Shown here piece by piece: positions 5,875 to 29,300 of a stretch of DNA of 64,000 bases (its first letter is position 1; each line of letters starts with the position of its first letter). This DNA is from Klebsormidium nitens (lineage: Eukaryota > Plantae > Klebsormidiophyceae): NCBI GenBank assembly GCA_000708835.1, contig DF237259.1:41873-105872 (forward strand), read 5' to 3'. The position numbers were made by a program, and so were the translations under genes. The notes beneath the pieces are model-generated. The model saw only the letters and a program-made list of their open reading frames with translations. It had not been told where the DNA came from and did not search any database.

Positions 5875-8800
5875 ATGAACTGGCTAACCACCCTGCAGCC
5901 TATTATAATTACTAAACTTGTACATAGTTTACCTGCTAACCTAAATTTGCTGACAGTGAAGGCAATTGGGCTGATTCTTGTGAGAGATGATTGGAACTTG
6001 AACTTGAAGAGCAGAAGCGTAGCAATGGCGGCCAAAGAAGGGACTTACCAAGGGGCGGATCCTTTGAGGCCTGTGCTGGATGCAGTCCAAACTGATTCTG
6101 CCCGCTTGTCTGGCTCAGACGCCTTAAAATATGACGCCTTGTATCCGATCTCAGCTGGCTGGCCTCCAAGTAAACAAGACCCGTTCCAACCTCATGACAA
6201 CTGGGATGCGTTCTGCAGAAGGCAGAAACAGGAGTATGTCGAACTGGACAGCAACCTCCGAGAGTTCGAGGGGGTAGATGAGAAGTTGAGAGAATTGGAG
6301 GTGCGGTGGAATCAATGCAGCTGGTATCCAGCATCTCTTTCTTTGTGCACTCCTCCATACAATGAGCTACTGAAAACATATGGAATTTCTATATACAACC
6401 CCTATGCCTCCACTCCCCTGATTCTTAAGCTCGTCTTGTGGTGGTGCATATGTATGACTGGGGGATATTGCCTGGCCGCTGGAGCTGCTCAATTCTCTCT
6501 ACTGTCAGCTCTCTTCTTACCTGTAAGCACATGGTATGTCTTTGAGGTCTTGTTCAAGCCTTACAACCACTTCACAGGATACAAAGTCAGAAAGTTTCGA
6601 AGAAAAATTGAGAACTCTTTTGCACTCACACATTTGCTTGCTCTCAAAAAGCTTCATCTTACTCTCCTGGTCCCGAATCTCGTAAAGAAGGTCTGTGAAT
6701 TCAGAAGGACCTTTTCTTGCCCCTCTTTAGCTAGTCAGAATCTGATCACTTCTGCTAGCTTTCTCAAGATTCTGGTCAAGCCTGGTCAAAGTCCACTTTT
6801 TCTCAGTTCAAAGTACAGTTCTGCTTTCGTCAAAGGAGCTACCACTATCTGCAGGTCAGTAGCGGGGAGCTCACCGCAGTTCTAACTAAGTGGCAAATAG
6901 AAATTGGAGTGGCTCACACTTTTGTGACCCGAGCTGAGAAAGCTGCGGCGAAGGCAGGCAGCACATCTTGCTTCTGCTTCAGCAGCGGTGGATTAGAAGA
7001 GAAACGGGCAGCCGCAGAAGAGGAGCTGAGGATCGCTCGCGGAGCCCTTGACGCTGCTGAAAAGGAGGAGCGCTCCGCTCAAGCGAAGCTGGAAAGGCCG
7101 CTTGAAGAGCTTCATCGCTTGCAGGTTGGTTCCTTCAAGATTGGAATAGGATATCTTATATTATATTACGTTCAGATGCAGCATGTTCCAGCTTTGCAAA
7201 GGTCCACGAGTAGAAAATGGGGACTTCCCCGCTCAATGTTACTAGAGCACAGGATGTACCTTCCCTTGTCATTGATTTTTGTCCTGTTCTCTGCACTTGT
7301 TAGCAGAGGACTTTCTGGTCGGAGTGAAGAAGATTGTTGGCTTAAAGAAAGTTAGGGCCCGCCATGAGCTTAACATCTTCTGAAGCAGGGCTTTTGATCA
7401 AGCCACTTCAATGACGCTCTCAAAGTGCCTTAACCACTGTGTTGAACCAATGATTCTGACCAAGCGTTCTTCGTGCATCGTCCAACCCAGTGGAAGAGGG
7501 CCACTCTCTTTGACCTAGACGACAAGTTTGATTGGCAAACTTACTTGTTTCTGCCTCGCGGGTGCGTTTTGTCCTCCCTAGTATGAATTCGTTGTAAACC
7601 TCAGAAGGTTAAAGCCGTTTTCGAAGGTGTTTGGCCAGGGCGTCTTTGAAGAGAATCAGCTTGCTTAGCCAGTCGACTCACTCATGCAGATGGTCGATCC
7701 TGACGAATTCCGTGGCCAGATGATTTGCGTTTACCTCGCAGCCCTCTATCCAGGTCCTCCACATGCGAGGAACTGACCAGGACTAGTCCTTCGACTTGGT
7801 ATCGGGCCTCTGTTTTGTGCTCCCCACGTTTTGTTCAGACCGTATGTTTTCTTCCTGTCATGCCTCGCGTTTGGGAATAATGCTAGAGCGCGGTTGCCTA
7901 AGCTTCGGGGCAGGTGCGGGCTTTAGATACCCTCTTTACTCTTCTATCAGTAATTCCCTATGTTTGGCCTTTCTAGGGAAAACCTTGGTCTTCAAACAGT
8001 CTATCTGACTTGAACTCTTACCTCCAGATTCCTTGTGCCTGTTTTTGAGAAGGAGCGGATAAGCGCCGCCACGCGCTTTGGGCCGGGGTGAATTCTTGCA
8101 CAGCCTGTTCACGAACACCTCGAAGGCACGTATTCCCCTCGTATCTGAAGCCTCCGACATGAACCTTTTCTTCTCTCCTCCTCCACTCACAGGAACGACC
8201 TAAGAGCGCTGCTGCGCGGGCCGTCAGATCCGATGGAGATATTGGACAGCCAGTTTACGGACATTAGAACCACGTCAGACTGCAGAATCCCCGTTCTTCA
8301 CATTCAAACTCCGTAATGCAGTATCTGCCCTGCTCACAGGGACAACGCAAGAGCGCCGCTGCCCGTGCTCTGGCCAGATTGCGCTTCAGGTCGAAAGGTA
8401 CACTTAAAAACCTCAAAGCCTCCCATGCCCCTCGCAACTGAGGACTCCAAGATGAACGGTTCGTCAAACATTTCTCGTCGATTTCTTCCTCTGCTCACAG
8501 GAACAACGCAAGAGCGCCGCAGCGCGGGCTTCAGACCAGATGGAGATTTTGGACAGCCTGTTCACGGACACTTCGGACGCGGCAGAGCAAGTCGCGGAGG
8601 ACCAAGTCGCCCGGCTGCTGCAAACGGGAGCGCAGATCGAGGCTGCGCTGACGGCCCAAAAAGAGGCGCTGCGCCTGTTGCACACGGCGCTCCTGCATTT
8701 CGAGGGCGGGCAGGCGCGGTTGCGGGGGCAAGGGACCGGGGGACTGGCGGAAGAGGTGAGCGGGCGTTTGAGTTGTTCGTGCGGATTGGGTCGTGCTTTG

Positions 8801-9858
8801 CCGGCTCGTTGGGCCGTTTATTATGCTTGATGGCGTGATGGCATGTGTTTCGTAATCCTCGGGGCATTCGTCTCTGAAGGCAGCACTTTCCGGAACACTC
8901 TGCACCCACTTTTCAGCGGAACGCAGTGTTTCTTGAGGCCACTCGATATTGCAAAGCCACCAAACACAAGGCTCCATTGGGCACTCATTGTCGTGGGCAT
9001 TGAAGTCTCCTTCTTTTCAGGGTTCGACTAGCAAGCCAGTATATTGCGAGTTTTAGTCATCTCGTGCAGTTTTGGATTTGCAAAAAGTCTCAACAATAAG
9101 GAGCCGTTACGATGAGGCGCGTGGTTGGTCCATTGCTTCGGTTGAGTCAATTTTCCCGGGTGCTGGATTTCTGACCGGTCGGTTCGTAATCGAGTCGTTT
9201 CTCATGAGCTGCATTTATAATTAGTCCGTTTGCTTTCTTAGGCTCTGCATGCCTACGCGTACGTCTTCCGACTGTCTGCTCCATTTTTACTGAACACGTC
9301 CAATCAACAATTTCATGTGTGGCACAGTTGCCAACTTATCGAGCTACGTATTCACACTTGCGTCCCGTTGTGCAGCTGCGACTACATCAAGCCGCCGCGC
9401 TTCTGGCCAGCTCCACGTCAGCGATCCAGAAGGCCCTGTCCGCAGCGCCCTTTGCCCCGGGCGCTGCCCGGTTGAAAACAGACCCCGGGGGACCGCTCGG
9501 CGCCTTCCTAAATGCGGGGCTTCCAAACGTGTTGCACGGATCGGGTGGCCCGGCCGCTGCCGGGAAATTGAGGGGACTGTTCGACGGTGCGTACACGGAA
9601 GTGTTGGCTCTGTATCAGTGGCATGAAAAGTTCGTTGCGAACATCGTTGACGACTTGGAGACAAACGCGGCGTCTCTAGTTGTTGCGAAGAAGGCGTTGC
9701 TAGAGGAGAGGCTGAGGTTAGTCCGGCAGGTGAGCGTGCAGCGGCAGGTGACGAACACAGAGCGGCGTAGGAGCTCACGGATCTCAGACGGTGTTCCGGA
9801 GGCGTCGCGGCTAGATCAGTATGCAAATGGGGAGGAACCGGGGCGATTAGACTGGTAG
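5875..9858 (+). CDS. Orphan protein with hydrophobic (likely TM) segment and C-terminal helical/coiled-coil region, 4-exon model
   Basis: Exons 5875(ATG also at ~6025)-6854, 6986-7124, 8501-8755, 9376-9858. All junctions are GT-AG with phases 2,0,0 that join in frame. Hydrophobic stretch LILKLVLWWCICMTGGYCLAAGAAQFSLLSALFLPVSTWYVF. No family recognised. Confidence 0.5.
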
Positions 9859-11111
9859 GTAGGCACGGTGTAGTTATGTATGCATGTCGAGTTGCAGGCA
9901 GATGTTAGGCAGCTTAGCTTAGTCTCCTGTCAGTTTAGAATGAGGTGAAATGCTCCCGGCGCATGTCACTGTACTTTTGACGCCAACCAGGGCTGTACTA
10001 GACATGTAGACTTCAGGTTATATCGCAGTCTTCTGTAAGCTGGGGCTTACAATAAAAGACGATGCTGTAGTATATCTAAGATAGCACAAATAAACTTGCA
10101 GCAAACAGGAAACCTTGAGAGACTACGTCTTGAGCTGAAGTATTTTGCAGACTGCCACAATGTTTTGCTGCTCGGGTGTGCATGTGCGATTGCTAGCTTG
10201 CGTTTGGTTCAGATCTGGGCTGGGAGGCCATGTGGAAAGCAGCCACCATGCATTAGATCAACCAGATTCTTGATAAAAGCCTTTGCGCCGGCCGCCTCAT
10301 CAGTAAACGGCACCTGTATGGACGTCTCGCGTATAGACTGATACCCTGTACCTAATGTACTATAATGCATGTGAAGTCACTGCGCTAGGTCTGGCCCGGT
10401 ATGTGGCGATCCTGATAAGCACATTGTCGAGGCCCGATGCACCGGCGGCCAACAAAGCGCGCCTAGGGCTTGTCGCGATCGCGATCGATCGGTTCTAGGC
10501 GGCTCGTACGTTCGGACCAACGTGTTGCATGTGTGCATGCAAGTCCGCGATCGCTTTCAGGAATTTTCGTCTTTGCCATGTACGTATCCTAAGCACCAAT
10601 TATCATGCGGAAATTCAATCTCGTTGTGGCATACATCAATCTGCAGTCGTGCCAGGTGACCATACAATCATTACCATAGGCTTGTAGTCACGTACCGGTA
10701 ACTAACAGCTGGTGCGGCGGCACCAGTCTGATGGGTAGCTCCAAGCAACAATGACCTGCATGATCGAATGTAAGATTAACCGGTCTGTATAAGATGTCAT
10801 GGGCGCATGCCTTGCAAGTCGAGAAGGCCATGGTCGAGCCTTCATATGATGCCATGCTTGACCGCAACATAGGTGTTTCATCAATAGCTTAGACGGACTT
10901 GCATAGCACGGAATCGTAACCTTTTGAATGATGTGCCACTTGCACAACCTCCTGTAGCAGCAGTACAACGAACTCCAAGTACACCTTGGTTACCCTCAAA
11001 GAGCATTCTTCCAGACATCCTGTTACTTCTTCAAGCAACGGGTGACTGAGATGAATATTATCGAGCTCCAAGAAAGTAACTTTTACTCGTAAGCAAGGTA
11101 GCCTCGAAGAT

Positions 11112-14100
11112 TCAGTGCCACGCCGGAGCAGCCAGCTTCTTCTCGCGAAGGTCTCGGAGGAGCGCGCCCATCTCAACCTGAGTAGGAAGCAGCGAGAAGA
11201 ACATAACGAGACCAGAAAGACTTGCGACTTGCTTTCACCTCAGTTTGTAACGAGAGAACGCGCGGTACCGGATCATTGTGCATGCAAAAGGGTCCGTCCT
11301 CTGCAAGCAGGCGCGTCAACCCACAGCACGTTTGAAGAGCTTATCTGAAATCAGTGTCCTGGTTGTCGGCTTCAGAAGTAATAAACTATAATTGTACGAA
11401 TGCTTCACGAACAGCAAACCGTCTCTCGTCCCTCTCACGAACGCATGTGCCGCTCATGAAAACGTTGGCGAATGCCTTGATTCCGTGCACCGAAACATGG
11501 GACAAAGCATCCCCTCGAAATCCCATCTCACTGAAGAACTCTCTCTAGAAGGTAGAATCTCGACAAGAGGAAACCAGTCAGAAGCGAGGCAGAATTAGGT
11601 GACAGGTGAGAACACAGAAATAATCAACGGAACTGCAAAGCACACTCAGCACGACTAGAGGAGTGCATGGATTTACCGCAGTCGCTGCGCACTCGCCGCC
11701 TTTGTTTCCGGCCTTGCCACCCGCCCTATCGATCGCCTGCAAACCATGTCAAGTCAGTCGTTAGAAGCAGTTGAACAATCCAGGGTGATCTCGTAAACCT
11801 GCTACACCGTGAACACTGCAAGCAGAGAGCCAAGGATCCTTCTGACGCTTTCTGTTAAGTACGTCGGCATCGAAAGCTAACGCTGATTTGCGGGAAACTT
11901 TCACCTCAAAGCTTTCTCATGAGATCTGAGACTCCGAACGTCTGCAAATTGAGTTGCCCTCTTCGTGAGGGCTTGCGCAAAACACGAAAGGCCAGAGCGG
12001 GAGAACCAAAGGAAGGACGGCGAGCTTGAGCGGATTGTAAAGAAGCAAGTACGCTGCCAAAAAGCGTTCGTAAGTTGCTCAAGTATATCCTGCGCAGGCT
12101 CATGCTTGCAGGTCTAGAAGATTGTAGCAAAGGCCCTCGTCATGTTTAATTTGGACCAACGCTGGCTGTAGTTCTGAAAAGCAATGAATGTGCCTCTCTT
12201 GTCTCATCAGTCACTGTGGCTCCTGCGGGTCTCGAAGAAATAATTCAACGAATGAAGGAGTTGGAGGCACGTCACCTGCTCCATGGTGTCACATGTGAGT
12301 ACACCAAAGATGACTGGTACTCCTGCAAAGAAGCATCGAGAAGGAAAGCTGTGAACAGTCTGTGTCCAGAGAATGCTTGCTGGCTCGAAAAGCCTTCATG
12401 TCTTGTTGACAGGTTTCTGGAGAGTAGTGAGCAGTGCTCGTAAAGCAGATCGTTCGCCCCCATTACGTGGGCATCGTAACAAAGAAAGCTTTCGGCCTTC
12501 GTGCACCTGGGCGGCTGACCTGCTCGCTTAAATTCGGCTCCAGACACCAAACAACAGGTAGCAGAATACCCCGTGGTCGTCTGGCGCTCGTAGATAAGGT
12601 GCGCGTGTCTCAGCAGCGTCAACAGAGATCGATCCTAATCGCGTCTTTCTCACGTGCCCATTTTTATCAGGTCACGAACGGCCGTTCTCTGACATGCTTC
12701 CCTCTCTTGCTAACCCCCTCTGCACGACGCTCACCATAAAAGACAATTGGCTGCGGTCGTGACCCACTTGACGGACTGGTGAGTAGTCTAACCTGTGGCT
12801 GCAGACGCCCCTAGGATTCCGCTCGTCGCTCCGTTGACCACCGCTTCGTAGTGTGTCGTCGCCCCACGGATCTGCACGACAGTCCCAAATCGGTAAAAGA
12901 GGGCGTACTCATACGCATCTGAATGACGGCACAGAGCGACTGCCAGACGGTCGCTCTGCTCTCACGTTGCCGAAAGTCAAGTGTCTCGGTTTATGTCTCC
13001 AGGCGACACTGCTGAAATGGTCACCGGTGCTGACGTTGACGTCCGCCCCAGTGAACCGCCCTCTTTAAAAGGCGTCGACAAAGAACCACATCACTAGTCA
13101 GACCATTCTGAGCCTTGCTCATAAACTAGAACAAGATCTTCGGACCAATTTTAGCAAGGAAGAGCTTCAGAACGGAAGGTTGGGGTAATCATCAAGGTTC
13201 CAAGGTGATTGGTCCCCCCATAAGGTCCTCGCTTGGTGGAAATGCTCTCAGATTCTCTGGAACGGGCCCAAACAGAATCTCTCAAAATCATTATGTAATC
13301 TCTAGAAATCAGAATAAACTTCTCAAAAATCAGAACATAATCTCTAATAATCAGGACATCAGCGGCGACACTTACCACGGCTCCTATGCACAAAACCGCG
13401 TCAAACTTGCCGCTCTTGGCCATCGCCGTCGCGACCACCGGTAGCTCGAAACTGCCGGGGACCCACACGATCTAGAAAACGAACAAAGGAAAAGTGTCAG
13501 AGACTGAAGGAGCATTCATAGGCCGCAGAGAGTTCTGTGCCCTGGCTGAGCACTCTCCTTCGACACAAACGGTGAGAAATGGGGGTGAGATCAGAATCGT
13601 AAGTGAAGCTCACCCGTCGGAGAGCTCGAGACACATGCATAATACTAGTCTGGGCTATGGCTCACTTTGCGACTGGGACAGCAATGCAGAGTTACAGGAC
13701 AATGCAAACCTCGCATCAGAGAGGCGGAGCGTTTTTGTGCGCATTTGCGGTCAGCTGCACACGATTCGAAAGATTTCAGGTGTCCCTACAACTTTCTCCC
13801 TATCCGTACATAGTCAAGTGAAAAGACGTTCTGCTTAGCTGACCTGTAACCTGACTTCAGGTCAAGAAGACCACCATCAGTCTGCAAATTGTCTTTTGAG
13901 TCTGCTAGGCAAGTTCTTTTTTCGCATGGGCGTTTTAGCTTCTGTTCAAAGCTTTGCAAGTGATTCATGCCCAGCTGCATTCTCTTTTACCGTTTCAACT
14001 GGGTTTGTGACCCTTTGTACTCTCGGTTTGCACCAGGTTTGCTCTTATTCCAAGAGGTTTCTAGAGATAAGGTAAGGAAAAAATGGCCCATGCGACAACA

Positions 14101-18800: not shown

Positions 18801-20026
18801 CAAGGAAGCCCCAATCTCTTTCTTGCTGTCCTGCAGATGTTGATTTGGGCCGCTTGTCTCGACTTCAGAAGGTGCAAAGTACACGAAAAGCCTCCCAACC
18901 TAGTTCTTCATCTTTCCCCAGGTACTACCACCGGGGCGTCGACTACGGCGCCGCGACGGGCTCCCCAGTTGTGTCTCCGGCCGGTGCGCGTGTGGCTCTC
19001 GTCGGTCGGGAGGAGGACGGGTTTCGGTTACACGGTAACTGCCTCGGGTTAGACCACGGTCAAGGGGTGGTTAGCACGATGCTTCACTTGGACAGAGTTC
19101 ACGTGAAAGAAGGGGACGTCGTGAAAGCGGGACAAGTCCTCGGGACGGTTGGGGAGACGGGGATCGCAACGGGGCCGCATCTGCACTGGTAAGAAGCACT
19201 GGGCTGGTTAGACACTGTTATCAGCATCCTGCTTGATGATGGTTTGCGAACCATGCGGGATACTGATTGGGAGCGATTCTCCTACTGACAGGCCGAAGCC
19301 ATTCAGAAAAGTACTCCTTGGAATCCTACTTGAAGTAGAAGGTGTTGTGGAAGGAAACGTATTCTCTGTTTTAGTTGTTAAGCTCTTCCAAAACGCTGCG
19401 AGGGGCTGTTCCGAAGGTAAGCGTTCGTCGGTTTTCTTTCTCCATCGTCCTGCCCCTTTTTCGCCCTCTCTGGCTTCCCCTTTCTGCTGTTTCGTCCCTC
19501 CGAACACCGGACCCTGATCCTTCCCTCCGTCGCTACTATCGTGTTTTCATATCCTTTTTCCCTCGTGCTTTTGAGTCCTCCTAGGGAGGTTCTTTACCCA
19601 ATCTGTGAATCCTAATGCGGGTCGCCACAAGGTTTGTTTTCTGCTGAGCTCTCATAACGAAAAGTAATCCGTTTCCGATTTCGACTTTTTGAAGACGACA
19701 GTTTTTGCAGATTAAGAAGACCCTCAATATGGAGAAAGGGAGAATCTTTTGAGACAGATTTCAGATTGGAAAAAGGGCACAACCAAGAGATAGACCTTTG
19801 TTTGCGGCGCCAACCCTGTCGTCTCGGTGAGAATTGGACGCGTAGTGCGACGAAGAGGAGACGAAGTTTCTCATCTGGTGCACGCTGCGGCAAACTTCGT
19901 AAAGCTTGGAACTAAAAAGTGTTGCTGGTTTTGCCAAGAAACGGCATCTGTTGCTACAGGGGTTTGTACGTGAACGGAGAGTGTATCGACCCAGAGCAGT
20001 GGATGCAACCTCAATCCTGGTTGTAG
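15805..20026 (+). CDS. Peptidase M23 (LytM) family zinc metallopeptidase, cyanobacterial-type peptidoglycan endopeptidase-like
   Basis: Exons 15805-16737, 17188-17299, 17918-18074, 18922-19188, 19960-20026 splice in frame. Catalytic motifs YYHRGVDY (HxxxD) and TGPHLHWGLYVNGECIDP (HxH), plus DHGQGVVSTMLHL and QLWSGPFLRP. Start codon uncertain. Confidence 0.9.
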
Positions 20027-20897
20027 GGGGAAAACGCGCTCGTTATGTGGATTCTTCATCGTTAAATGTAGAACGAAACGCATGCAGAGCAGATTGTGCG
20101 GCTCACAAAATAGTAAGATCTGTAATAAGGTTTCCAAAGTCTCAGATCCTAATAGGTGCCCGACTTTGTCGTAAAAGCAGCACGCGCTTGGGGCTCTGCA
20201 GAGGTGATTACTAAGGCGGCTACAGCACACAGCGCGTGCTGCGTGAATTACGCAATGTGCACCGCACAATTGATCTTGACTCCCATCAGCTGGCATGAAC
20301 TGGGGCATCCAACAGAAAAATGAATCGCGGTTTGGCCGCGATGGCTGACCCGCCTACTTTTCCTATAAACATTTCCAGGTGTACTCTTGCTGTATAAATA
20401 TGCAAATCAGTCCATAGCTGTATACGCAAGTATGCTCCCGATTCGTGGCTGCGCATTTCCGCACACGCACGCTAGCTGCAACTTAAGCAGAAGCTTCGAA
20501 ATCTGGCATGTACGATCGCCAGAGAGGTGTTGTATTTGAAAGGTCGGACGCAGCCGGGCCCTTTCTGCGTTATGAGGCCGGCGCAGCACTCCGAGGTTCA
20601 GCTTGTGAATATCACCTACCCATGATCGTGTTTGTTACGTACTCTTTCTTGCACACCATGAGGATATGGCCGGCCCCGCATGTAGCCCTCCATCAGTGCG
20701 ACATGGCGCAGCACAATTGTGGGTCCACCGTCATGTTGCATCACTTTTGGAAGTATATACCGCGTCAGGTGGTAATTGTGAATTATATACACTTCGGGCC
20801 GACCTGGACAATTGGGTATGCGTCTTATAGGCCATTTAATCTCTCTACAGCGTGCTTAATCTGCTGCAACCGATAGAATAAGTTAAGTTAAACCGTA

Positions 20898-22708
20898 CTA
20901 GGCCGCATGCCCTGCCTCAAGAGTCCCCTTGAGAAACTGTTGGGAAAGCGTTTGTTGAGACGCAAACAACTCCTCAGGCGTGCCCCTTTCCACGATCCGC
21001 CCCTTCACCAGCAGACACACCTCGTCCGCAACCCGACGTATCTGCTCCACGTCATGTGACACCATTACCACCGTCATCCCGGTCTCGTCTCGTAACCGCA
21101 AAATCGTTTCCTCCACCAGTCTAGTTGCCCCGGGGTCTAAAGCTGACGTCGGCTCATCCAACAACAAGCACTCTGGTTGGTTGGCTAACGTCCTGGCCAA
21201 AGAAACGCGTTGCGCCTGGCCCCCCGAGAGCTGGGAAGCGGGAACGGAAGCCATACCGGGCTCTAAACCCGCTTTCTGAAGCAGGTCTTCGACCTGGTTA
21301 TCTGTTGATCGTTCGCCCCGTAACCGGGGGCCGTATCGCACGTTATCGGCGACCGTACCTGCAAACGAGGAACGACTGACGCGTCATCTCGAAAGTTGCT
21401 AAGGGGACTACAGAAGGCGATGGGCAGTTCTGTTGACATCAGGGGAAGAAACGCATACCACTTTTCAAGTCCCGTACGGAAGACGTGCACTCCACAAATG
21501 AGGTTTGAGAAGTTGACCTCAATCTTTGTCAGAGCCAGAACAACACTTGTGCGAGTCGCCAAGACCAACCGAACGGATCCGAGCAAGGTTGTTTCAAAGA
21601 CGGCTGGGTAATGAGCAGGATGGCGTCGATGAAGACTCCCCGACAATCTTCGAGGTTTGAACCTCACTTCGGAGACTCTTGGTACGCGCCTCGTTTTTTA
21701 TTATGTTCAGCAGAATCGCGCAAAGCCGTCCTTCTTGTCAGACTGCACAAATCCGGTAGGGGGTCCCGCAGTCTTCTCTCCACTCATATCCGTTTCATCG
21801 TGAGAGCATGCATAAATTGATAGCTGATAGCTTTTCCGAAAAACAAACAGCCAGGTTAACCTTTATCTTTAAGCGAAACAGACTTCATACTTATTCCGAA
21901 ACGGTTTGAGGACCGGCCACGCCGAGCTTACCGTCAAACAGCGCCGCAGTTTGGAACGGCACCCCAACGCGGCGCCGTAGCTTGACCACGTCTAGCGTGG
22001 TGACATCAACCAAATCAACCCCTCGTTAATTCTTAGAGGAAAGTCCAAAGAAGCGGCCCGGCCGAGCTTACCGTCAAAGAGCGCCGCGGTTTGAAACAGC
22101 GCCCCTACGTGGCGCCGTGACTTGACCACGTCCAGCATCATGACATCACATCTAACCCCCCCCTCGCTAGTAAACTCTTAGCGCAAAGTCCAATGAAGCG
22201 GCCAGGCCGAGCTTACCGTCAAAGAGCGCCGCGGTTTGGAACAGCGCCCCTACGCGGCGCCAGGTTTGGCCACGTCTCGGGTGACATCAACCACATTCAA
22301 CCCCTCCCGGTAGTTACTTCTCAGCGGCAAGTCTAAAGCTTACCGTCAAAAAGCGCCGCCGTTTGGAACAGCGCCCCAACGCGGCGCCGCAGCTTGACCA
22401 CGTCTAGCGCAGTAATATCATTCCCGTCCAGCAGCACCGTCCCTTTCCCAGGCTCCCACAACCGATTCATCGCCCTAAGAAGAGTGGACTTTCCGCTTCC
22501 GCTCGGCCCGATGAGCCCGACGATCCGCCCGCGGGGCACCTCGAGGCTGACGTCATCGAGGATGCGCTCCTGGCTTGATGACGTCAGCGAGAGGTTGCGT
22601 AACTGCAGCCGAGGCGTTTCCGTTTGTGCTGTTGGGCTGGTGCTGTGGCGGTTGGCTTGAGTGGCTTCGCGCTTGAGAACGTTGGGCGTCTTCGGGGTGT
22701 CTTCGGGG
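20898..22708 (-). CDS. STAR1: ABC ATPase domain, STAR1/NAP3 (ABCI17)/FetA-like; C-terminal part of a fused gene
   Basis: Exons 22344-22708 and 20898-21358. Walker A GPSGSGKS, signature LSGGQAQRV, Walker B LLLDEPTSALD, H-loop VSHD. No ATG between the exon acceptor and Walker A. Confidence 0.9.
21900..22420 (-). repeat. Four tandem ~127-145 bp copies of exon 3' end plus donor (…FQTAALFD G|gtaagct)
   Basis: gcttaccgtcaaa…gcgccgc…tttggaacagcgcc… recurs with donor positions at 22344 (functional), 22217, 22072 and 21932. Confidence 0.92.
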
Positions 22709-23020
22709 CTGGCAAAAGCAGAAAGAGAAATGACTTCGTCAATGAGAAGCTTATTAATCTCTTCGTTGAGCCCTTCAAACGCTGCAGGGAATGTACGTTG
22801 GCACTTAGGTGAAAGTGCCTGCCTTTCAATCCCTCGATTTAGTAGTTCACGGGATCATGCATTACAGACTTTGTTTGATCAAGCCGACGCCCATGTTACA
22901 ACAGGTTTTCGTCAGAAAGCATTGCAGTTGACGCACCCAGTCTGGCGTTACAACGAACTGAAAACGGGCCTGCAAAAGAACAAAAGTAAAAACAGATTCT
23001 CCTCAGTTCATTCATCCCAC

Positions 23021-25347
23021 CTGCTTGCCGCCGGCCCGTCCGACATCAAAGACGGATCCAGCTGATACGCCGGGGTGAAGAATCTGCGCTGACTCAGATA
23101 CGCCGCAGCAAGCCCGCTAAACGTTGCGGCGCCCGTGAGCATATACAATACGACCATCTGTAATTGGACTGCTTCTAACGGCGACGCCCCGCCCATTATG
23201 AGACCGGTCATTGCGCCCGGGAGTGAGACCAGGCCGATTGTTTTCGCGGTGTCGATAATGGGGCTCATCCCGGTTCCGAGTGCGCGGCGCAGCTGTACGA
23301 GGCTCGCTTGGCGGGGGGTGGCCCCCTAGGGCCAGCGCAACTTCGACCTGTGTACCAAAAGACTCTTGCATAAAAAATGATGAGTTCTTTTGGTGGGGGG
23401 GTGTCTTTTAGACTAAAACGTTTTCGCCCCCAAAAGGAAACCAAATGGAGGTTTCAAACCAGCTGACGACAAGCGACGGTGATTGCCATGAGATGAAACG
23501 GGTGTTGACGAATGGTGTTGGCGATCAAACTTATTCGTCATCATAGGGAGCGGCTCATGAGGTTTACAAGTATTGAACTCTTTTGGAGTCGTCGATTGCA
23601 GTTGCACCTAGGTTGTCAAAATCCACACTTCCTGTCATATTCTGAAACCAAGTAGGAGGAGTTGTTCTGAAACTGAAGGAATCGTTGAATCTTCATGGTA
23701 TGATGTCCTTCCGAAAAGCATGTTTGTTATGGTGACCCTACGTGTCTGGGACACTCTTATCCAGGCTTGTGAGCCAGGCGACCAGCCAAAGTTCTTGCCA
23801 AACCCGGATTATTGATGCTACCAGACTCCCGCGTTCAATATCATCCTCGAGCAGTGATCTGCCGAGAAGCTCACCTCAAGACGCTGTAGGCGGAGGTCCT
23901 CTCGTAGGCGCTTCATAGTTACCCCCGTGACGCTCATTGCGTTTCCGGTGATGTTTCCAGCTATGGGGATAATATACCGCGGCTCAAAGGGAAAGACGCG
24001 GAGTAGAACCAGAGCTGTGGTCGTAAGGCTGGTGGCAACCAAGACGGCCAGGGTCGCAACCACGTGACTGCCGGGGACGGCGCGAGCGCGCTCGCCTGCG
24101 GTGTAGCCGGCAATCAGAACCTGGTCAAGGGGGGTCGAGTGTACAGTTTTGAGAAGGTGCTTACACAGAGGATGAGGCAGAAGTTGAAGGACGGAGAGGC
24201 AGCCTTCTTGCTTTGCATGAAGGCCTCTGAAGAAAAGGAGGTCTTTGTGTACAATAGGACGAAAGAGACAAGTTAATTGGGAGTGACTTGGGACCCAAAA
24301 GCTCTCTCCCAGCTCCCTAAAGTGGTTTTTTTCCACACACCGATATGCCAAATGACTGTCGAAGAGGCAATCAAAGAATGGACTCACATGGAGACCCAAC
24401 CCCACGATGTTTTGCTTGAAAGAGCAAGCCTGAAGGAAACGTGTACACATTCATCACAGGAGTGCAATCAGCCAAGATTCGAGAGATTTGGTTCGAATTT
24501 CAACGTCTCAAACCGTTTGAAACCTCTCACTAAGTCTAACACTCACCATAACGCTGATGGAGACCAGAATGAGAGCAGCCCCCTTCTGCGCAAACACGTA
24601 CTGCAGCGCGAATCCAATCCCAATGAGCTGCACAAAGGAGCGCACGACGGCCACCAGCATCTCCTTCTCTAGGCCGACGCCCTCGCGCCATGAGATCAGC
24701 ATTGCAGCCAGTACTAGCGCCATAGCAGCAATCGGGCGTAGCAATCCCCGTGCAAACTGGCTTTGATGCACATTAGTCAGGGCTTCAGAAATAGCTGAGG
24801 CAGGAGAGAAGGCAGACAGACGCGTCGATCGCCTGGGGCTAGTGGAAGGATGTGTTTGTAGACTTGCTAGCTGAATGTAGTTTTTTTGGGGAGTGCCTGA
24901 TCTCCAAAAAGCAGAGTGGCTTTGATGCACATTAGCTGCTGCTGAGCTCAGGTTTTCAGAACTTGCTGAAGGAGGGGAGAAGGCAGACAAATGTGCGGAG
25001 CGCCTTAGGGCAGGGGAATGATGAGTGTGTGTATCTGCTAGCAGCTGAGTGCGGTGATGTTTAAGAGTGCCTGAATGCAAGAAAGGGGTCTTTCTAAGGA
25101 TGAGGGGTGAGCCAAATTCTGTGACTAGTAACCGAGTGTGGTGGTGTTTAGGAGTGCCTGAGCTCAGAAAAGGAGTCTCTTTGAAGATGAGAGGTCGGGT
25201 AATTGGCGATGTACTGCCTATGCATCTTGGAGAAGGCATCTGTTGAATGCCGCTGTGTTGTGCAGGGGTGATCGAAGCGCGCTGTAATGGATTGCCGCTG
25301 AATTTGACAGCCAGCTCCATGGGGATCGAATAGATGCTGGTCACCAT
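23021..25347 (-). CDS. ALS3: UPF0014 permease ALS3/STAR2 (ABCI16)/FetB-like with long N-terminal extension; N-terminal part of a fused gene; contains a +1 frameshift
   Basis: Exons 24547-25347, 23875-24120, 23021-23347. Motifs EKEMLVAVVRSFVQLIGIGFALQYVF, PRYIIPIAGNITGNAM, ALGATPRQA (after frameshift correction), DTAKTIGLVSLPGAMTGLIMGGASPLEAVQLQ, FFTPAYQL. Confidence 0.9.
24750..25200 (-). repeat. Nested degenerate ~85-160 bp repeats in the ALS3-like N-terminal region
   Basis: tggctttgatgcacattag at ~24758 and ~24917; (g/a)gagtgcctga at ~24890, 25065, 25151; aagg(g/a)gtct..aagatgag at ~25083 and 25169. Confidence 0.75.
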
Positions 25348-26349
25348 GACTCTGGAGAGGAAGGGACTCTGATCACTATCCTTCAGCTTCCGTTACAAAA
25401 TCTTCCGTTTTCGCTTTACAATGTGGTCCACACCTGTAAGATTAAGTGCCCTGCATTGATCAACAATGCCGACGAGCCCCAGTCAGCAAGAAGCACCCTG
25501 TTCAGCAAACCATTCTTATGTCAAACCATTCCACCTAGGAACCATACCTCCTAAACTGTCGACCACTTTGTTCAGTCAAAAACAAAGTCTGTATCAGGAC
25601 TTCCTCCATGAGATCTGCAGCTGAGGTATGAATTGCGGGTCCTGACGTCATCAAGCACACAGAACCATTTTCGCGGCTCGGTAGTACTCGCCGGTCGATG
25701 ACCACGTTGCATCGTAGTCTAATCGAGCTGGAAAGTCTGACCCTTGGTTGATACCGCTTCATACATACTTGCACAGGCGATCCGAGAAGTTCTTAGCCTC
25801 CTTTCTGGGATTCTCAATCAGCCGACCGCCCCGGTTACTGAGCAGTGGCCGGGGTGCTAAAGATTCCGATTCTCCAAGAGGAGCTGTCGCAAGAGCACTC
25901 CCCCAACTCTGCTCCCCACCTCCGAGGTCCCTATTAATAAACGACCCGGGGCGCGAGCAGGCCGGGGAGGCAGACGTAGAACTGAAACTAGGAGTCTCCT
26001 AACTGTTCCAATTTCAACATGCACCAAGCGGCGTGGAGCAGCACTGCCAGCATGCAGGGACCAACGTCCCGGCCATGAGAAAATGTAGACAATTGTGCCA
26101 TGTAACTAGATATAATAATCATCGACAGTCTGGCCATGAAGTAATCCAACGCAAAATTTCCGTATAATCACATTTGCTTTTGCCATGATGGTGCAAAAGC
26201 GGCCGTATCCTACGTGCAGATGGGGCCTCGAGCACAACTAGGATTCGAAGCAGCTACTTTGAAACGAACCAAGTAGGAACCAATAATGTTATCACATAAG
26301 TTGCAAACACAGTCAAGAAACCACGGGCTGAACCTTTGACTATAAGTGA

Positions 26350-29300
26350 CTACCTTTCTGATCCATCAGGAAAGCCGTCAAGCGCACCCTTCTCTCCCTT
26401 CACATAATACCGCTCTACCGCCAACATCCTCTCGTACTTGTCAGGGTGGTAGTTCACGTGAACTGTCACTGGCTTTATCTTTTCCAACTCCCAGGACTTT
26501 CGTACTCGAGTAAACAGTACCTTGCTGTTCATGAAGAGAAGGTAATCTAGCACCCGTTTTGACGCGTGAAGCCCGTCGTACCCCGGACTCGACGGCCGGA
26601 AGAGCTCCTCGTTGAACACCGCCTGATCCCAAGCGTTCTCTTTACTCAACCGGTCCGCGACCCTATCCAGCAACTCAATCGACGCCGCCGTCGGGCGGAT
26701 GTAAAACAGCCCCGAATTGAAGACCCATATCCGCATCGTGTGCGCATACCGTGACCACCCCATCTTCGGATCATCAGACACGTCATCGAACCCGTACGAC
26801 GTAAAATTGTCATGCCCGTCGGTCATCCCCTCAACATCGCAGTCCCGATACAGAAACTTGAACGGATTTTGGAGGAATACAATATCAACATCCGATAATA
26901 GCACGCTGTATCCGAGCAGCATGAACTCCCGCAGGATGTGGAACTTGAGCCCCGAGATCGCGTGGTTCGACCCCGCGTTCTTCTGCGAGTCGGGGATCTC
27001 GAGCGTCTTCCGGTAGTACGGGACGCCGTTCTCCTCGCAAAACTCGGCAATCTCGTCGTCTAAGCACACGACGAGGTAATTGGTCGCCCCCGTGCGCCGC
27101 ACGTTCTCGAACCACGTCTGAAGCATTGGCCGGATGTTGTTGTTCGACACGGCGACAATGAGCTCCTTGCTGACCGCCACCTTTTCGAGGATCTGTAGAG
27201 AAGTTCAGTATTGCAAACGTTAGATTGCCAAACAGGCAGCAGAGGTATTGCGACCGCAAAGCCGATTGTGATAATTCTGCAAGGGAGAGAAGGCAGCCTT
27301 TTCGCTCTTCCTCATCGAAGGCTTATACAGCTCCTTGCACGCGTCTGCTTTCTAGAATCTGCAAAAGAAACCTTCTAGTTGGATATCCGGAATGTTTGAC
27401 TCCAACATAATAGTTGCAGCATTGGAGACGAGACTAATAGCAGAGGAGAGAGCAAGAGGCTCAGAACAGCGGAAGATGAATTCGCCCCTTGCTTGCAAAA
27501 CCGCCACTTCGTCCAATAGTGTCGAAGAAAGGCTGACAGAGAGACTCTTCGTCTGGTCATACGCTTTCACTGCGAAGCTGACGGCTCGTGCCGCTACAAG
27601 TTTCAAATTTTTAGCCACCAAACGGTCGCTTCGTTCTGAACGGACACACGAGAGAAGGACCATCGTCCAAAGGTCAAGGGTTTGATCCACTTGCGATTGC
27701 TAAAATGTACTTTGCAGACTTCGGATGCCCGTGTGTCATTCGGAGAGTGTGCGATGCGAACGGTCTGTCGTTCAGAAACACCACAGGGCGAGCTTCTGGT
27801 AGAGGCGAAGGATTGATAGCTTACAGTCCCGCACACTCCATTACATCGCCTGCAAAACTCTCCTTCGAAGTACTAATCAAATCATAGTAATCCTCGACTA
27901 AAAGTGCCGGGGCAACACAGGGAAACTTCCCGCATCCAAACTCCTTCGTTTTTTCCGATCTGGAATCATACCCAGCAGAGTTCGACAAAACTTGTCGGCT
28001 CTTAGGACTTCGTAACTGACAGTTGTAAGCAGAATGCGGTGCTGCTTCTCGTTCAATTGTCTGATCTGGCCCGTTTGTATCTTCTTCATAGTGCGCCAGA
28101 CGATCAATCCTTTAAACAACCGAACCTCTCAGAAGATGCTCTTCATCAGCAGCTTAGGGGAGCCCCAGTCGACTTCATTGCTGACCCAAACCAAGTTTCA
28201 GTCTAAGGTCGCAAGTGCCGGGAAGCAATTCCTCTGATCAATGGTTATTTCCATGGTCGCCCCGCTGCTAAGCGTCTTGCTTGCCATCCCCGAAATTCTA
28301 ATCCTGATTGCCTCAAGCCGCACAGTTCTCTATGGAAACCAGAGGAAAAGCCACAAACGGCATGTAAGGGGCCAAACCCACAAGAATCAGCAAGGGCCTC
28401 CTACCCTTCAAGAGCCCCAGGGGACGTAAGAACAGGTCGCAGTGACCTCAACCTGTTGAGCCCATAACCAAGGCTAGGGCGAAGAAACAAAGAGCAATGA
28501 GAGCAAATGTAAGGTAGCGAAAACGCAGATCTTATCACCTTTGCCAGCTCCGTGTTCACTTTCGGATCCGGCACAATTGTCGGGAATGTCCTCTCTGCCT
28601 TTATCGACCCCGGCGGCCCCGCCACCGGCCGCTCCTCCTTTTTCACCCGTGCCGGCTGCCGGTACGTCTCGCGAGCCTTCTCTAGTTGCTTCTTCAGACT
28701 GTCAATCTCAAGCTGCGGGTCGTTTCCCTCAGCAGCAGCTAAGGACACGCCTTCTTGCAGGGCGGCTTGTAGTTTCTTCCGAAGAACTGCGGCTTCGGCG
28801 GCAAGGTTTTCACGTTGCCGGACAGCCGCCTCATGCTTCTGCTCGAGTGCGTTTTTCTCCTCCTCTAGTTCTGCCAGCCGCTCCTCCAGATGTTGGGGGC
28901 CCAGTCCCTGCAAACAGGATCAAGTGATTTCGATTGATTCCCATCTCTTCGTCTGATGATTACAACCCCGATATGATATAATGCACTCAAGCTGAGAAAT
29001 GGCAGAAGAACAAGATCAACGAATGGAAGATAGAAAGAGAGAACAGATTGCTCATTGTTTGCAAGTTGAACGTCTTCAAATCTGATCAGGCAATATGTTG
29101 CCATCTAGCTGTCCATCCAAAAAGAATGCGGAAGCTGGGCGGAGAGAGGAGAGCTCGAAGGACTTTTTGGGCAACAAAGGGGCGAGGCGCTGATTGGGGG
29201 GAGCATGTGTATTTGAGGATTCTTCCTCCAATCCAATTTGATGAAAGTTACGAGTGTTTAGAGGTGTTTCGGCAATTGGTAAATCCACTCTGCGCAAGGT

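What the first reader, a model, noticed from the sequence alone, without database searches (positions are those of the whole stretch)
20898..25347. ALS3/STAR2 permease and STAR1 ATPase encoded as one fused TMD-NBD gene
Seen: the permease frame ends …FFTPAYQLDPSLMSDGPAAS AG|gtggga (donor 23020). The ATPase exon starts after a strong tract tttctctttctgcttttgccag|C (22708), and AG+C restores frame through a ~45-aa linker (SPEDTPKTPNVLKREATQANRHSTSPTAQTETPR) into LQLRNLSL…GPSGSGKS. The ATPase exon has no ATG before Walker A. Predicted product about 732 aa. Established: in angiosperms STAR1 and STAR2/ALS3 are separate genes forming a bacterial-type ABC complex in Al tolerance and phosphate-starvation root responses; E. 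coli fetA/fetB are separate, ATPase first. Inference: a half-transporter architecture for this family that could homodimerise. I do not know whether it has been reported.
Basis: partly seen in the sequence, partly recalled or inferred. Interest (0 to 1): 0.85.

Follow-up and report, generated by a model that had tools for sequence, protein, structure and literature searches.

The report
Spliced permease-ATPase fusion gene, frame-broken
In this green alga a membrane permease gene and its partner ATPase gene are spliced into one messenger RNA, a layout I found nowhere else in this transporter family, but one extra G in the permease part breaks the reading frame, so the fused protein may no longer be made.

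Summary
Spliced RNA contigs from four studies carry that junction, and one 1991-nt contig runs from the 5'UTR through all permease exons into the last ATPase exon. No RNA contig lies in the joining intron, and the ATPase exon has no ATG of its own. The fused transcript is therefore real.

It puts the conserved permease sequence one base out of frame. The RNA contigs carry the same five G. As sequenced, the mRNA encodes a 425-aa truncated permease (stop 23119-23117), followed by a 376-codon open +1 frame (last permease helices, linker, intact ATPase). The 732-aa product needs one G to be skipped.

The alga (probably Klebsormidium nitens) also has an intact, unfused pair elsewhere, in the bacterial order ATPase then permease, 194 bp apart. 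The window gene is its faster-evolving duplicate, with the order swapped.

Substitution patterns show purifying selection on both sides of the frameshift, so the break is recent or bypassed. I found no other permease-to-ATPase fusion among relatives. Verdict: a new variant of a known transporter kind, of moderate interest, and whether it still works is unresolved.

The parts
24547..25587 (-). Exon 1. The 5'UTR reaches at least 25570-25587 and holds four tiny uORFs. The ATG is at 25347. It encodes a roughly 200-aa N-terminal extension rich in Ser, Thr, Pro, His and Arg, then the first ~62 residues of the UPF0014 permease domain (hydropathy: two helices and the start of a third).
   Evidence: UPF0014 profile 5-66; RNA contigs reach 25570-25587; uORFs, in-frame stop upstream of the ATG; composition and hydropathy.
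23875..24120 (-). Exon 2, the middle of the permease (UPF0014 profile 68-150).
   Evidence: Joints 24547/24120 and 23875/23347 are present in all four RNA runs.
23021..23347 (-). Exon 3, the C-terminal third of the permease. The frame changes inside it.
   Evidence: (UPF0014 profile 160-242 in the +1 frame).
23322..23326 (-). Run of five G: a 1-nt insertion relative to the conserved ALALG-ATPRQA motif. This is the +1 frameshift site.
   Evidence: paralogue has GGT GCC; motif conserved in Klebsormidium and embryophyte homologues; Chara has SLCLGATPKQA; RNA contigs identical, 0 gaps.
23117..23119 (-). TAG stop of the frame that starts at ATG 25347 (425-aa product). It lies 96 nt upstream of the exon 3/4 junction.
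   Evidence: and direct reading.
22709..23020 (-). The fusion intron (312 nt, GT-AG). It holds the old permease stop TGA at 23010-23008. It probably derives from the former intergenic spacer.
   Evidence: joint in 4 of 4 runs with side 255, and zero contig depth over 22753-22933; no in-frame ATG.
22344..22708 (-). Exon 4: a linker of about 33 aa (SPEDTPK...ETPR), then the N-terminal half of the ATPase domain with Walker A and the Q-loop.
   Evidence: (ABC_tran profile 1-71).
21359..22343 (-). Intron 4. It holds a tandem array (21914-22308, period 145) of degenerate copies of the 3' end of exon 4, each with its GGTAAG donor. RNA contigs cover part of this intron.
   Evidence: tblastn copies at 22259-22218, 22147-22073, 22019-21933; contigs 21330-22089 and 22060-22234.
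20898..21358 (-). Exon 5: the C-terminal half of the ATPase domain (LSGGQ signature, Walker B, H-loop) and the stop TAG at 20900-20898. The 3'UTR runs to about 20770.

Best explanation
This is a lineage-specific duplicate of a bacterial-type two-gene ABC module: a FetB/ALS3-type UPF0014 permease plus its FetA/STAR1-type ATPase. In this duplicate the gene order has been swapped to permease then ATPase. The former intergenic spacer has become a 312-nt intron, so that one mRNA carries both parts in one continuous frame across the junction.

Shown: the exon structure, the spliced single transcript, the in-frame junction, the lack of an independent start for the ATPase, the intact ATPase motifs, the existence of an intact unfused paralogous pair, and the 1-nt insertion.

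Inferred:
(1) The intact gene encoded a permease-ATPase half-transporter of about 732 aa. It would pair with a second copy of itself, giving the same make-up as two permease and two ATPase subunits.
(2) The permease-first order is the only one that topology allows. By hydropathy and the positive-inside rule the permease has an odd number of helices, with its N-terminus outside and its C-terminus in the cytoplasm, where the ATPase must sit.
(3) In the sequenced strain the extra G in exon 3 now ends translation after 425 aa. The gene is therefore most likely a recently disabled, still transcribed copy, and the intact split pair covers its loss.
(4) The break is recent, because the sequence after it is as constrained as the sequence before it and remains open for 376 codons.
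For: Spliced transcript: one search shows joints 24547/24120, 23875/23347, 23021/22708 and 22344/21358 in runs X1, X5, X6 and X7. The 1991-nt contigs (X6 record 16, X7 record 20) span 25570 to 21330, and there is no depth in 22753-22933. Domains. No own start. Frameshift. Paralogous pair: (L001: ATPase 8432-9807, permease 10001-11897, same intron positions). Selection: one search gives pN 0.10 against pS 0.62 before the frameshift, pN 0.10 against pS 0.77 after it, and pN 0.23 against pS 0.70 for the ATPase. One search shows window-only deviations at conserved columns of 5/96 before and 6/68 after the frameshift, mostly conservative. Sister relation with a long window branch: (95/86 support; branch 0.26 against 0). 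ATPase motifs intact. Topology. No frameshift-stimulating RNA fold: (z 0.02).
Against: A transcript with a stop 96 nt upstream of an exon junction should be degraded by nonsense-mediated decay, yet it assembles in every run laid. All four runs may be the same laboratory strain, so I cannot tell a strain-specific lesion from a species-wide state. Logan contigs drop rare variants, so a minority of frame-correct RNA (four G, or the alternative acceptor at 23325) cannot be excluded. No protein or ribosome data were available. The topology argument rests on hydropathy only, because the family has no solved structure.
Confidence: 0.6

Rival explanations
1. The full-length 732-aa fused half-transporter is still made, because ribosomes slip +1 on the G run. 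A glycine tRNA on GGG can re-pair perfectly on the next GGG, after which GCC ACC reads the conserved frame.
For: The run allows perfect re-pairing and the shifted frame gives exactly the conserved ALALG-ATPRQA motif. The 376 codons after it are open and as constrained as those before it. The mRNA is present in all four runs.
Against: The next zero-frame codon is GGC, which is neither a stop nor an obviously slow codon as in known +1 sites (established knowledge: antizyme, Ty1, prfB). There is no special downstream RNA fold (z 0.02). No conservation could be shown, because no orthologue was found. A recent mutation predicts the same open downstream frame.
Confidence: 0.1
2. A minor alternative 3' splice site, ccctag|GGGGCC (exon start 23325), restores the frame. 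It would yield a fused protein that lacks the seven residues VEVALAL.
For: Exon 2 ends in phase 0, and starting exon 3 at 23325 gives an open frame to the ATPase stop (and, with the exon 4 end corrected to 22344). An AG preceded by a moderately pyrimidine-rich stretch is present.
Against: No contig in four runs shows a 23875/23325 joint; all show 23875/23347. The deleted residues belong to the best conserved motif of the family, and Pfam profile positions 151-159 would be lost.
Confidence: 0.07
3. The five G are an error of the assembly and the real gene is intact.
For: Earlier notes on this genome mention several single-base frameshifts in other genes.
Against: RNA contigs from four independent studies match the window across 23021-23349 with 0 other letters and 0 gaps.
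Confidence: 0.03
4. The joint is incidental read-through splicing between two neighbouring genes, and the two proteins are made separately.
For: Neighbouring-gene chimeric transcripts are common in eukaryotes.
Against: The ATPase exon and its upstream extension have no in-frame ATG before Walker A. No RNA contig lies in the spacer in any run, although introns 2 and 4 are partly covered in all four runs and intron 1 in one. The junction preserves the frame and removes only about four codons of the permease and a few of the ATPase.
Confidence: 0.05

Closest known systems
Plant STAR1/ALS3 (STAR2) complex, i.e. ABCI17/ABCI16 (rice and Arabidopsis aluminium tolerance; restrains STOP1 under low phosphate)
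   Same: The permease is 59-64% identical between its K. nitens paralogue and land-plant ALS3/STAR2 proteins. It shares the motif E-x-ALALGATPRQA and the whole UPF0014 domain. Its partner is a soluble-type ABC ATPase with all catalytic motifs.
   Different: In land plants the two parts are separate, unlinked genes (established knowledge; PMC6852189 describes ALS3 and STAR1 as two proteins forming a complex). Here they are exons of one mRNA, permease first, with a ~200-aa N-terminal extension and a broken frame. The substrate and location in the alga are unknown.
Bacterial FetA/FetB (YbbL/YbbM) iron-export ABC transporter
   Same: Same permease family (NCBIfam TIGR00245 FetB is the only family hit), with a dedicated ATPase as partner.
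   Different: In 79 of 80 enterobacterial loci the ATPase gene lies directly upstream of the permease gene and the two are never in one frame. Metagenome relatives L115, L116, L119 and L120 have the same ATPase-first order. The window has the reverse order, introns and a fusion.
Paralogous locus in Klebsormidium nitens: KFL_000180460 and the ABC_tran gene upstream of it (GCA_000708835.1, DF236967.1)
   Same: Permease exons are 82-90% identical and ATPase exons 65-74% identical at the protein level, with the same intron positions. It is sister to the window gene in the tree.
   Different: It consists of two separate genes, ATPase (278 aa) then permease (300 aa), 194 bp apart, both with intact frames. 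Its permease has hardly changed since the duplication (branch about 0, against 0.26 for the window copy).
ABC half-transporters in general (one membrane domain and one ATPase domain in a chain, e.g. ABCB and ABCG half-size proteins)
   Same: A single chain with one membrane domain and one ATPase domain, expected to act as a dimer.
   Different: The membrane domain fold is unrelated (UPF0014, no solved structure). The fusion is young and confined to one lineage, not an ancient family trait.

Membership tests
UPF0014 / FetB / ALS3 permease family (PF03649, TIGR00245) | Match to the family profile over its whole length | tested here: met
   exons 1-3 cover profile positions 5-66, 68-150 and 160-242 of 242 (E 5e-12, 2e-13, 4e-26). 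Positions 151-159 correspond to LE+VEVALAL. FetB is the only NCBIfam hit. Each exon scores below the whole-protein cut-off because the exons were scanned separately.
UPF0014 / FetB / ALS3 permease family (PF03649, TIGR00245) | Conserved motif E-x-ALALGATPRQA in one reading frame | tested here: not met
   the motif is split by an extra G (23326-23322). VEVALALG is in frame 0 and ATPRQA is in frame +1.
UPF0014 / FetB / ALS3 permease family (PF03649, TIGR00245) | Groups with streptophyte ALS3-type proteins in a tree | tested here: met
   sister to K. nitens KFL_000180460 (95/86) and placed among the land-plant ALS3/STAR2 sequences. The Chara row is on a very long branch and uninformative.
ABC transporter ATPase (PF00005) | Walker A, Q-loop, LSGGQ signature, Walker B, H-loop all present | tested here: met
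   GPSGSGKS, FQTAALF, LSGGQAQR, LLLDEPTSALD and VSHD are all present, in an open frame of 376 codons.
STAR1 / FetA-type partner ATPase | Orthology to the ATPase that pairs with the UPF0014 permease | tested here: inconclusive
   It is 65-74% identical to the K. nitens ATPase that sits directly upstream of the ALS3-type gene. In NCBIfam, FetA hits the N-terminal half only moderately (65.6 bits) and PstB and ECF ATPases score higher on the C-terminal half. No authentic plant STAR1 sequence was available for comparison.
Single-chain ABC half-transporter | One uninterrupted open frame from membrane domain to ATPase domain | tested here: not met
   the frame from ATG 25347 stops at 23119-23117. Only the +1 frame (23325 to 20901) runs through the junction.
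Single-chain ABC half-transporter | Both domains on one mature mRNA, joined in frame | tested here: met
   1991-nt contigs span all junctions and the joint 23021/22708 is in 4 of 4 runs. AG+C keeps the frame.
Programmed +1 ribosomal frameshift site | Slippery site followed by a slow or stop codon, a stimulatory element, and conservation in relatives | tested here: inconclusive
   The G run allows re-pairing, but the next codon is GGC. The downstream fold is no better than shuffles. No orthologues were found to test conservation.

The most novel reading that the evidence does not exclude
The five-G run is read through by +1 ribosomal slippage. The alga would then make a 732-aa UPF0014-ATPase half-transporter, which would be the first single-chain form of the FetAB / STAR1-ALS3 family I could find, and a rare case of +1 frameshifting in a cellular gene of the green lineage. 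The amount of transporter would be set by the slippage rate.
Probability: 0.1. Interest if true: 0.8.

Novelty: new variant of a known kind. Interest (0 to 1): 0.45.

Why it matters
It is a clear example of how a two-gene bacterial-type ABC module can become a single-chain half-transporter in a eukaryote. The likely steps were duplication, a swap of order, conversion of the intergenic spacer into an intron, and loss of the second start codon. The unfused parent pair is still present in the same genome for comparison.

If the permease topology inferred here is right, it explains why the fused order had to be the reverse of the operon order. A fused version could also be a handy single-gene tool for studying the poorly understood STAR1/ALS3 transporter, whose substrate is disputed and whose structure is unsolved.

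The frameshift weakens all of this. In the sequenced strain the gene may be a recently dead duplicate.

Tried and rejected
1. Searching for fused relatives using the 658-aa Chara protein P0030 as a length proxy returned only itself. Low-complexity words probably filled the candidate list, so the result is uninformative.

2. The P0001 search lists only full-length matches in its top 120. It could not reveal a partial model of the window gene.

3. Exact look-ups of six window ORFs found nothing. I therefore could not see how the public annotation models this gene, nor prove directly that the window and L001 come from one assembly. The organism name rests on the 86%-identical K. nitens paralogue and on earlier agents' notes.

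4. The metagenome scan found no relative above 73% identity over any segment (67% over the full query), so there were no wild Klebsormidium copies in which to check the G run.

5. The genome-contig scan returned only Enterobacterales, which is a narrow sample.

6. Atlas searches gave only generic family names.

7. PDB sequence searches found no structure of the permease family and only generic ABC ATPases.

8. The fused protein could not be folded.

9. Paper searches found no report of a fused form.

Full report
THE OBSERVATION

The gene lies on the minus strand. Reading 25500 to 20700 and translating gives five exons: 25347-24547, 24120-23875, 23347-23021, 22708-22344 and 21358-20898. All introns are GT-AG.

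Pfam places UPF0014 (the FetB/ALS3 permease family) on the end of exon 1 and on exons 2 and 3. These cover profile positions 5-66, 68-150 and 160-242 of 242. ABC_tran falls on exons 4 and 5. NCBIfam's only hit for the permease exons is FetB.

- the donor AG|gtggga, with 23020 as the first intron base;
- the acceptor ttttgccag|C at 22708;
- AG+C restoring a Ser codon;
- the linker running into LQLRNLSL and GPSGSGKS;
- the RWDE* stop at 23010-23008 if the intron is not removed.

IS THE FUSION TRANSCRIBED?

Yes. I laid Logan contigs of four runs from four studies on 20400-25800. The tool only guesses that these runs are RNA. However, each carries four canonical intron-skipping joints, so they are spliced RNA.

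- The joint 23021/22708 is present in all four runs, with 255 nt on the shorter side.
- Two 1991-nt contigs (X6 record 16, X7 record 20) run from 25570 through every junction to 21330. The 5'UTR, the permease, the linker and the ATPase are therefore on one molecule.
- The fusion intron has no contig at all over 22753-22933 in any run. Introns 2 and 4 are partly covered in all four runs and intron 1 in one.
- Extending exon 4 upstream without splicing meets a stop at 22857-22855 with no in-frame ATG. The first Met of the ATPase part lies after Walker A.

The ATPase can therefore only be translated as a continuation of the permease frame.

From ATG 25347 the spliced mRNA reads ...LRLQRLE VEVALALG and then GHPPPSEPR..., stopping at 23119-23117. 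The conserved permease sequence GATPRQASLVQLRR... continues in the +1 frame. That frame is open from 23325 to the ATPase stop, a run of 376 codons.

The cause is a run of five G at 23326-23322. Klebsormidium and embryophyte homologues read E-x-ALALGATPRQA here, and Chara has the related SLCLGATPKQA. The closest paralogue has GGT GCC where the window has GGG G GCC. The Pfam gap of nine profile positions (151-159) is filled exactly by LE+VEVALAL.

The RNA contigs match the window over 23021-23349 with no gaps. The extra G is therefore in the RNA as well and is not an assembly error. The 732-aa product exists only if one G is skipped.

WHERE THE GENE CAME FROM

The nearest database protein is KFL_000180460 of Klebsormidium nitens. 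It is a 300-aa stand-alone permease, 86% identical over the exon 1 part.

At its locus (L001) an ABC_tran gene of 278 aa sits 194 bp upstream on the same strand. That is the bacterial order, ATPase first. I confirmed this order in 79 of 80 enterobacterial loci and in four metagenome contigs.

The window's exons are 82-90% (permease) and 65-74% (ATPase) identical in protein to that pair. DNA identity is 69-78% and the intron positions are the same. In a tree the two permeases are sisters (95/86), and nearly all change since the split lies on the window branch: 0.26 against about 0.

Earlier agents' notes name this genome K. nitens. I could not confirm that by an exact look-up.

The simplest history is a duplication of the ATPase-permease pair, with the permease of one unit fused to the ATPase of the next.
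- The donor lies four codons before the old permease stop.
- The acceptor lies about where the ATPase's own variable N-terminus began. The linker aligns weakly with residues 19-37 of the paralogous ATPase.
- The 312-nt intron is what remains of the spacer.
- The window holds no remnants of flanking copies.

IS IT STILL UNDER SELECTION?

Between the two loci, synonymous sites are saturated or nearly so (pS 0.62-0.77). Non-synonymous differences are few: pN 0.10 before the frameshift, pN 0.10 after it and pN 0.23 in the ATPase with its linker.

I also looked at columns conserved across embryophytes and Chara.
- The window deviates alone at 5 of 96 columns before the frameshift and 6 of 68 after it.
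- The paralogue deviates alone at 1 and 0.
- Most of the window's changes are conservative.

All ATPase motifs are intact. The fused copy has therefore evolved faster than its parent but under purifying selection. The part behind the frameshift shows no extra decay. The frameshift is either recent or somehow bypassed.

HOW IT WOULD WORK

All of this section is inferred. Hydropathy gives five clear helices and two weaker ones.
- The strongly basic loop between the two weak helices carries the conserved motif. It should be cytoplasmic, together with the RR-containing C-terminal tail.
- With an odd number of helices, the N-terminus is then on the other side of the membrane.
- Only a C-terminal ATPase fusion is topologically possible, which would explain the swapped order.
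- A tether of about 57 residues (24-aa tail plus 33-aa linker) separates the last helix from the ATPase.
- Two such chains would reproduce a complex of two permeases and two ATPases.

The ~200-aa N-terminal extension is rich in Ser, Thr, Pro, His and Arg, and has only six acidic residues. It looks like a targeting peptide, but I could not test that.

WHAT THE FRAMESHIFT MEANS

I weighed four readings.
- A recent disabling mutation in a redundant duplicate fits best. An intact split pair exists, the window copy evolves faster, and part of intron 4 is also covered by RNA contigs.
- +1 slippage on the G run is mechanically possible, since the tRNA can re-pair perfectly. But the next codon is GGC, not a stop or an obviously slow one, the downstream RNA folds no better than shuffles, and no orthologue was available to test conservation.
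- An alternative acceptor at 23325 would restore the frame, but it would delete seven residues of the best conserved motif. It is not seen in any contig.
- An assembly error is excluded by the RNA.

Because all four runs may be the same laboratory strain, and because contigs hide minor variants, I cannot separate these readings further.

IS THE ARCHITECTURE KNOWN?

I found no other permease-to-ATPase fusion.
- Among the 150 best of 1952 representatives matching exon 3, nearly all matches end at the protein's C-terminus. Of the proteins that are much longer or run on beyond the match, the nine scanned with Pfam carried no ABC_tran domain. These include Chara's 658-aa protein, a retroelement chimera and an HMA_2-UPF0014 protein. 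A few shorter proteins with some sequence beyond the match were not scanned.
- The 120 best homologues of the K. nitens paralogue all carry PF03649 alone.
- All 60 nearest Atlas clusters do too.
- None of the 39 metagenome loci has an ATPase downstream.
- Five paper searches found no report.

These samples are limited: the best 150 hits, clusters of 50 or more members, and the tools' length windows. Rarity is therefore suggested, not proven.

VERDICT

The interpretation, one fused gene, holds at the RNA level and probably held at the protein level until recently. In the sequenced strain the frame is broken, and the organism also keeps the ordinary split pair.

This is a new variant of a known transporter kind. 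It is of moderate interest as a caught-in-the-act domain fusion. It would be of higher interest only if the G run proves to be decoded.

Noticed in passing
L001:8432-11897 (K. nitens GCA_000708835.1, DF236967.1): An intron-bearing nuclear ATPase gene (278 aa) and a UPF0014 permease gene (300 aa) lie 194 bp apart on the same strand, in the order of the bacterial fetA-fetB operon. In land plants the two genes are unlinked. This looks like a retained operon-type linkage and hints at a single transfer of the pair. Whether the two genes are co-transcribed is unknown.
   Followed up: partly
window 21914-22308 (intron 4): A tandem array (period 145, about 2.5-2.8 copies) of degenerate copies of the last ~25-29 codons of exon 4, each with its GGTAAG donor. 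RNA contigs cover 21330-22089 and 22060-22234, so this intron is partly retained, or the decoy donors are used. Reading into the intron stops right after the donor (GKL*).
   Followed up: partly
window 24750-25347 (minus strand, exon 1): The ~200-aa N-terminal extension contains internal repeats (KETPFLSSGTPKHHHTRLL / RKTPFLHSGTLKHHRTQLL, and RRSAHLSAFSPPSAS... / RRSTRLSAFSPASAI...). It has 33 Ser, 18 Thr, 18 Pro, 15 His and 12 Arg, but only 6 acidic residues. It resembles an organelle-targeting peptide. The paralogue has only about 40 residues here.
   Followed up: partly
P0089 (485 aa) and P0023 (1489 aa): One representative carries a heavy-metal-associated HMA_2 domain in front of a UPF0014 permease, which fits a metal-related role for the family. 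Another is a retrotransposon polyprotein (protease, RT, RNase H) run into a UPF0014 domain, probably a gene-model chimera.
   Followed up: no
L082-L084, L097, L099, L100, L103, L117 (metagenome contigs): Several contigs encode intron-less permeases 61-73% identical to exon 3. No ABC ATPase lies within up to 5 kb on either side, where the contig reaches that far. This differs both from the bacterial operon type (L115, L116, L119, L120) and from the intron-bearing plant type. Their origin is undetermined.
   Followed up: no
window 26350-27180 (minus) and 18845-19189 (plus): Neighbouring exons encode a nucleotide-diphospho-sugar transferase (PF03407, E 2e-46) and a peptidase M23 domain (PF01551, E 3e-24). 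Neither resembles the neighbours of the paralogous locus, so the two loci are not in a duplicated block.
   Followed up: partly
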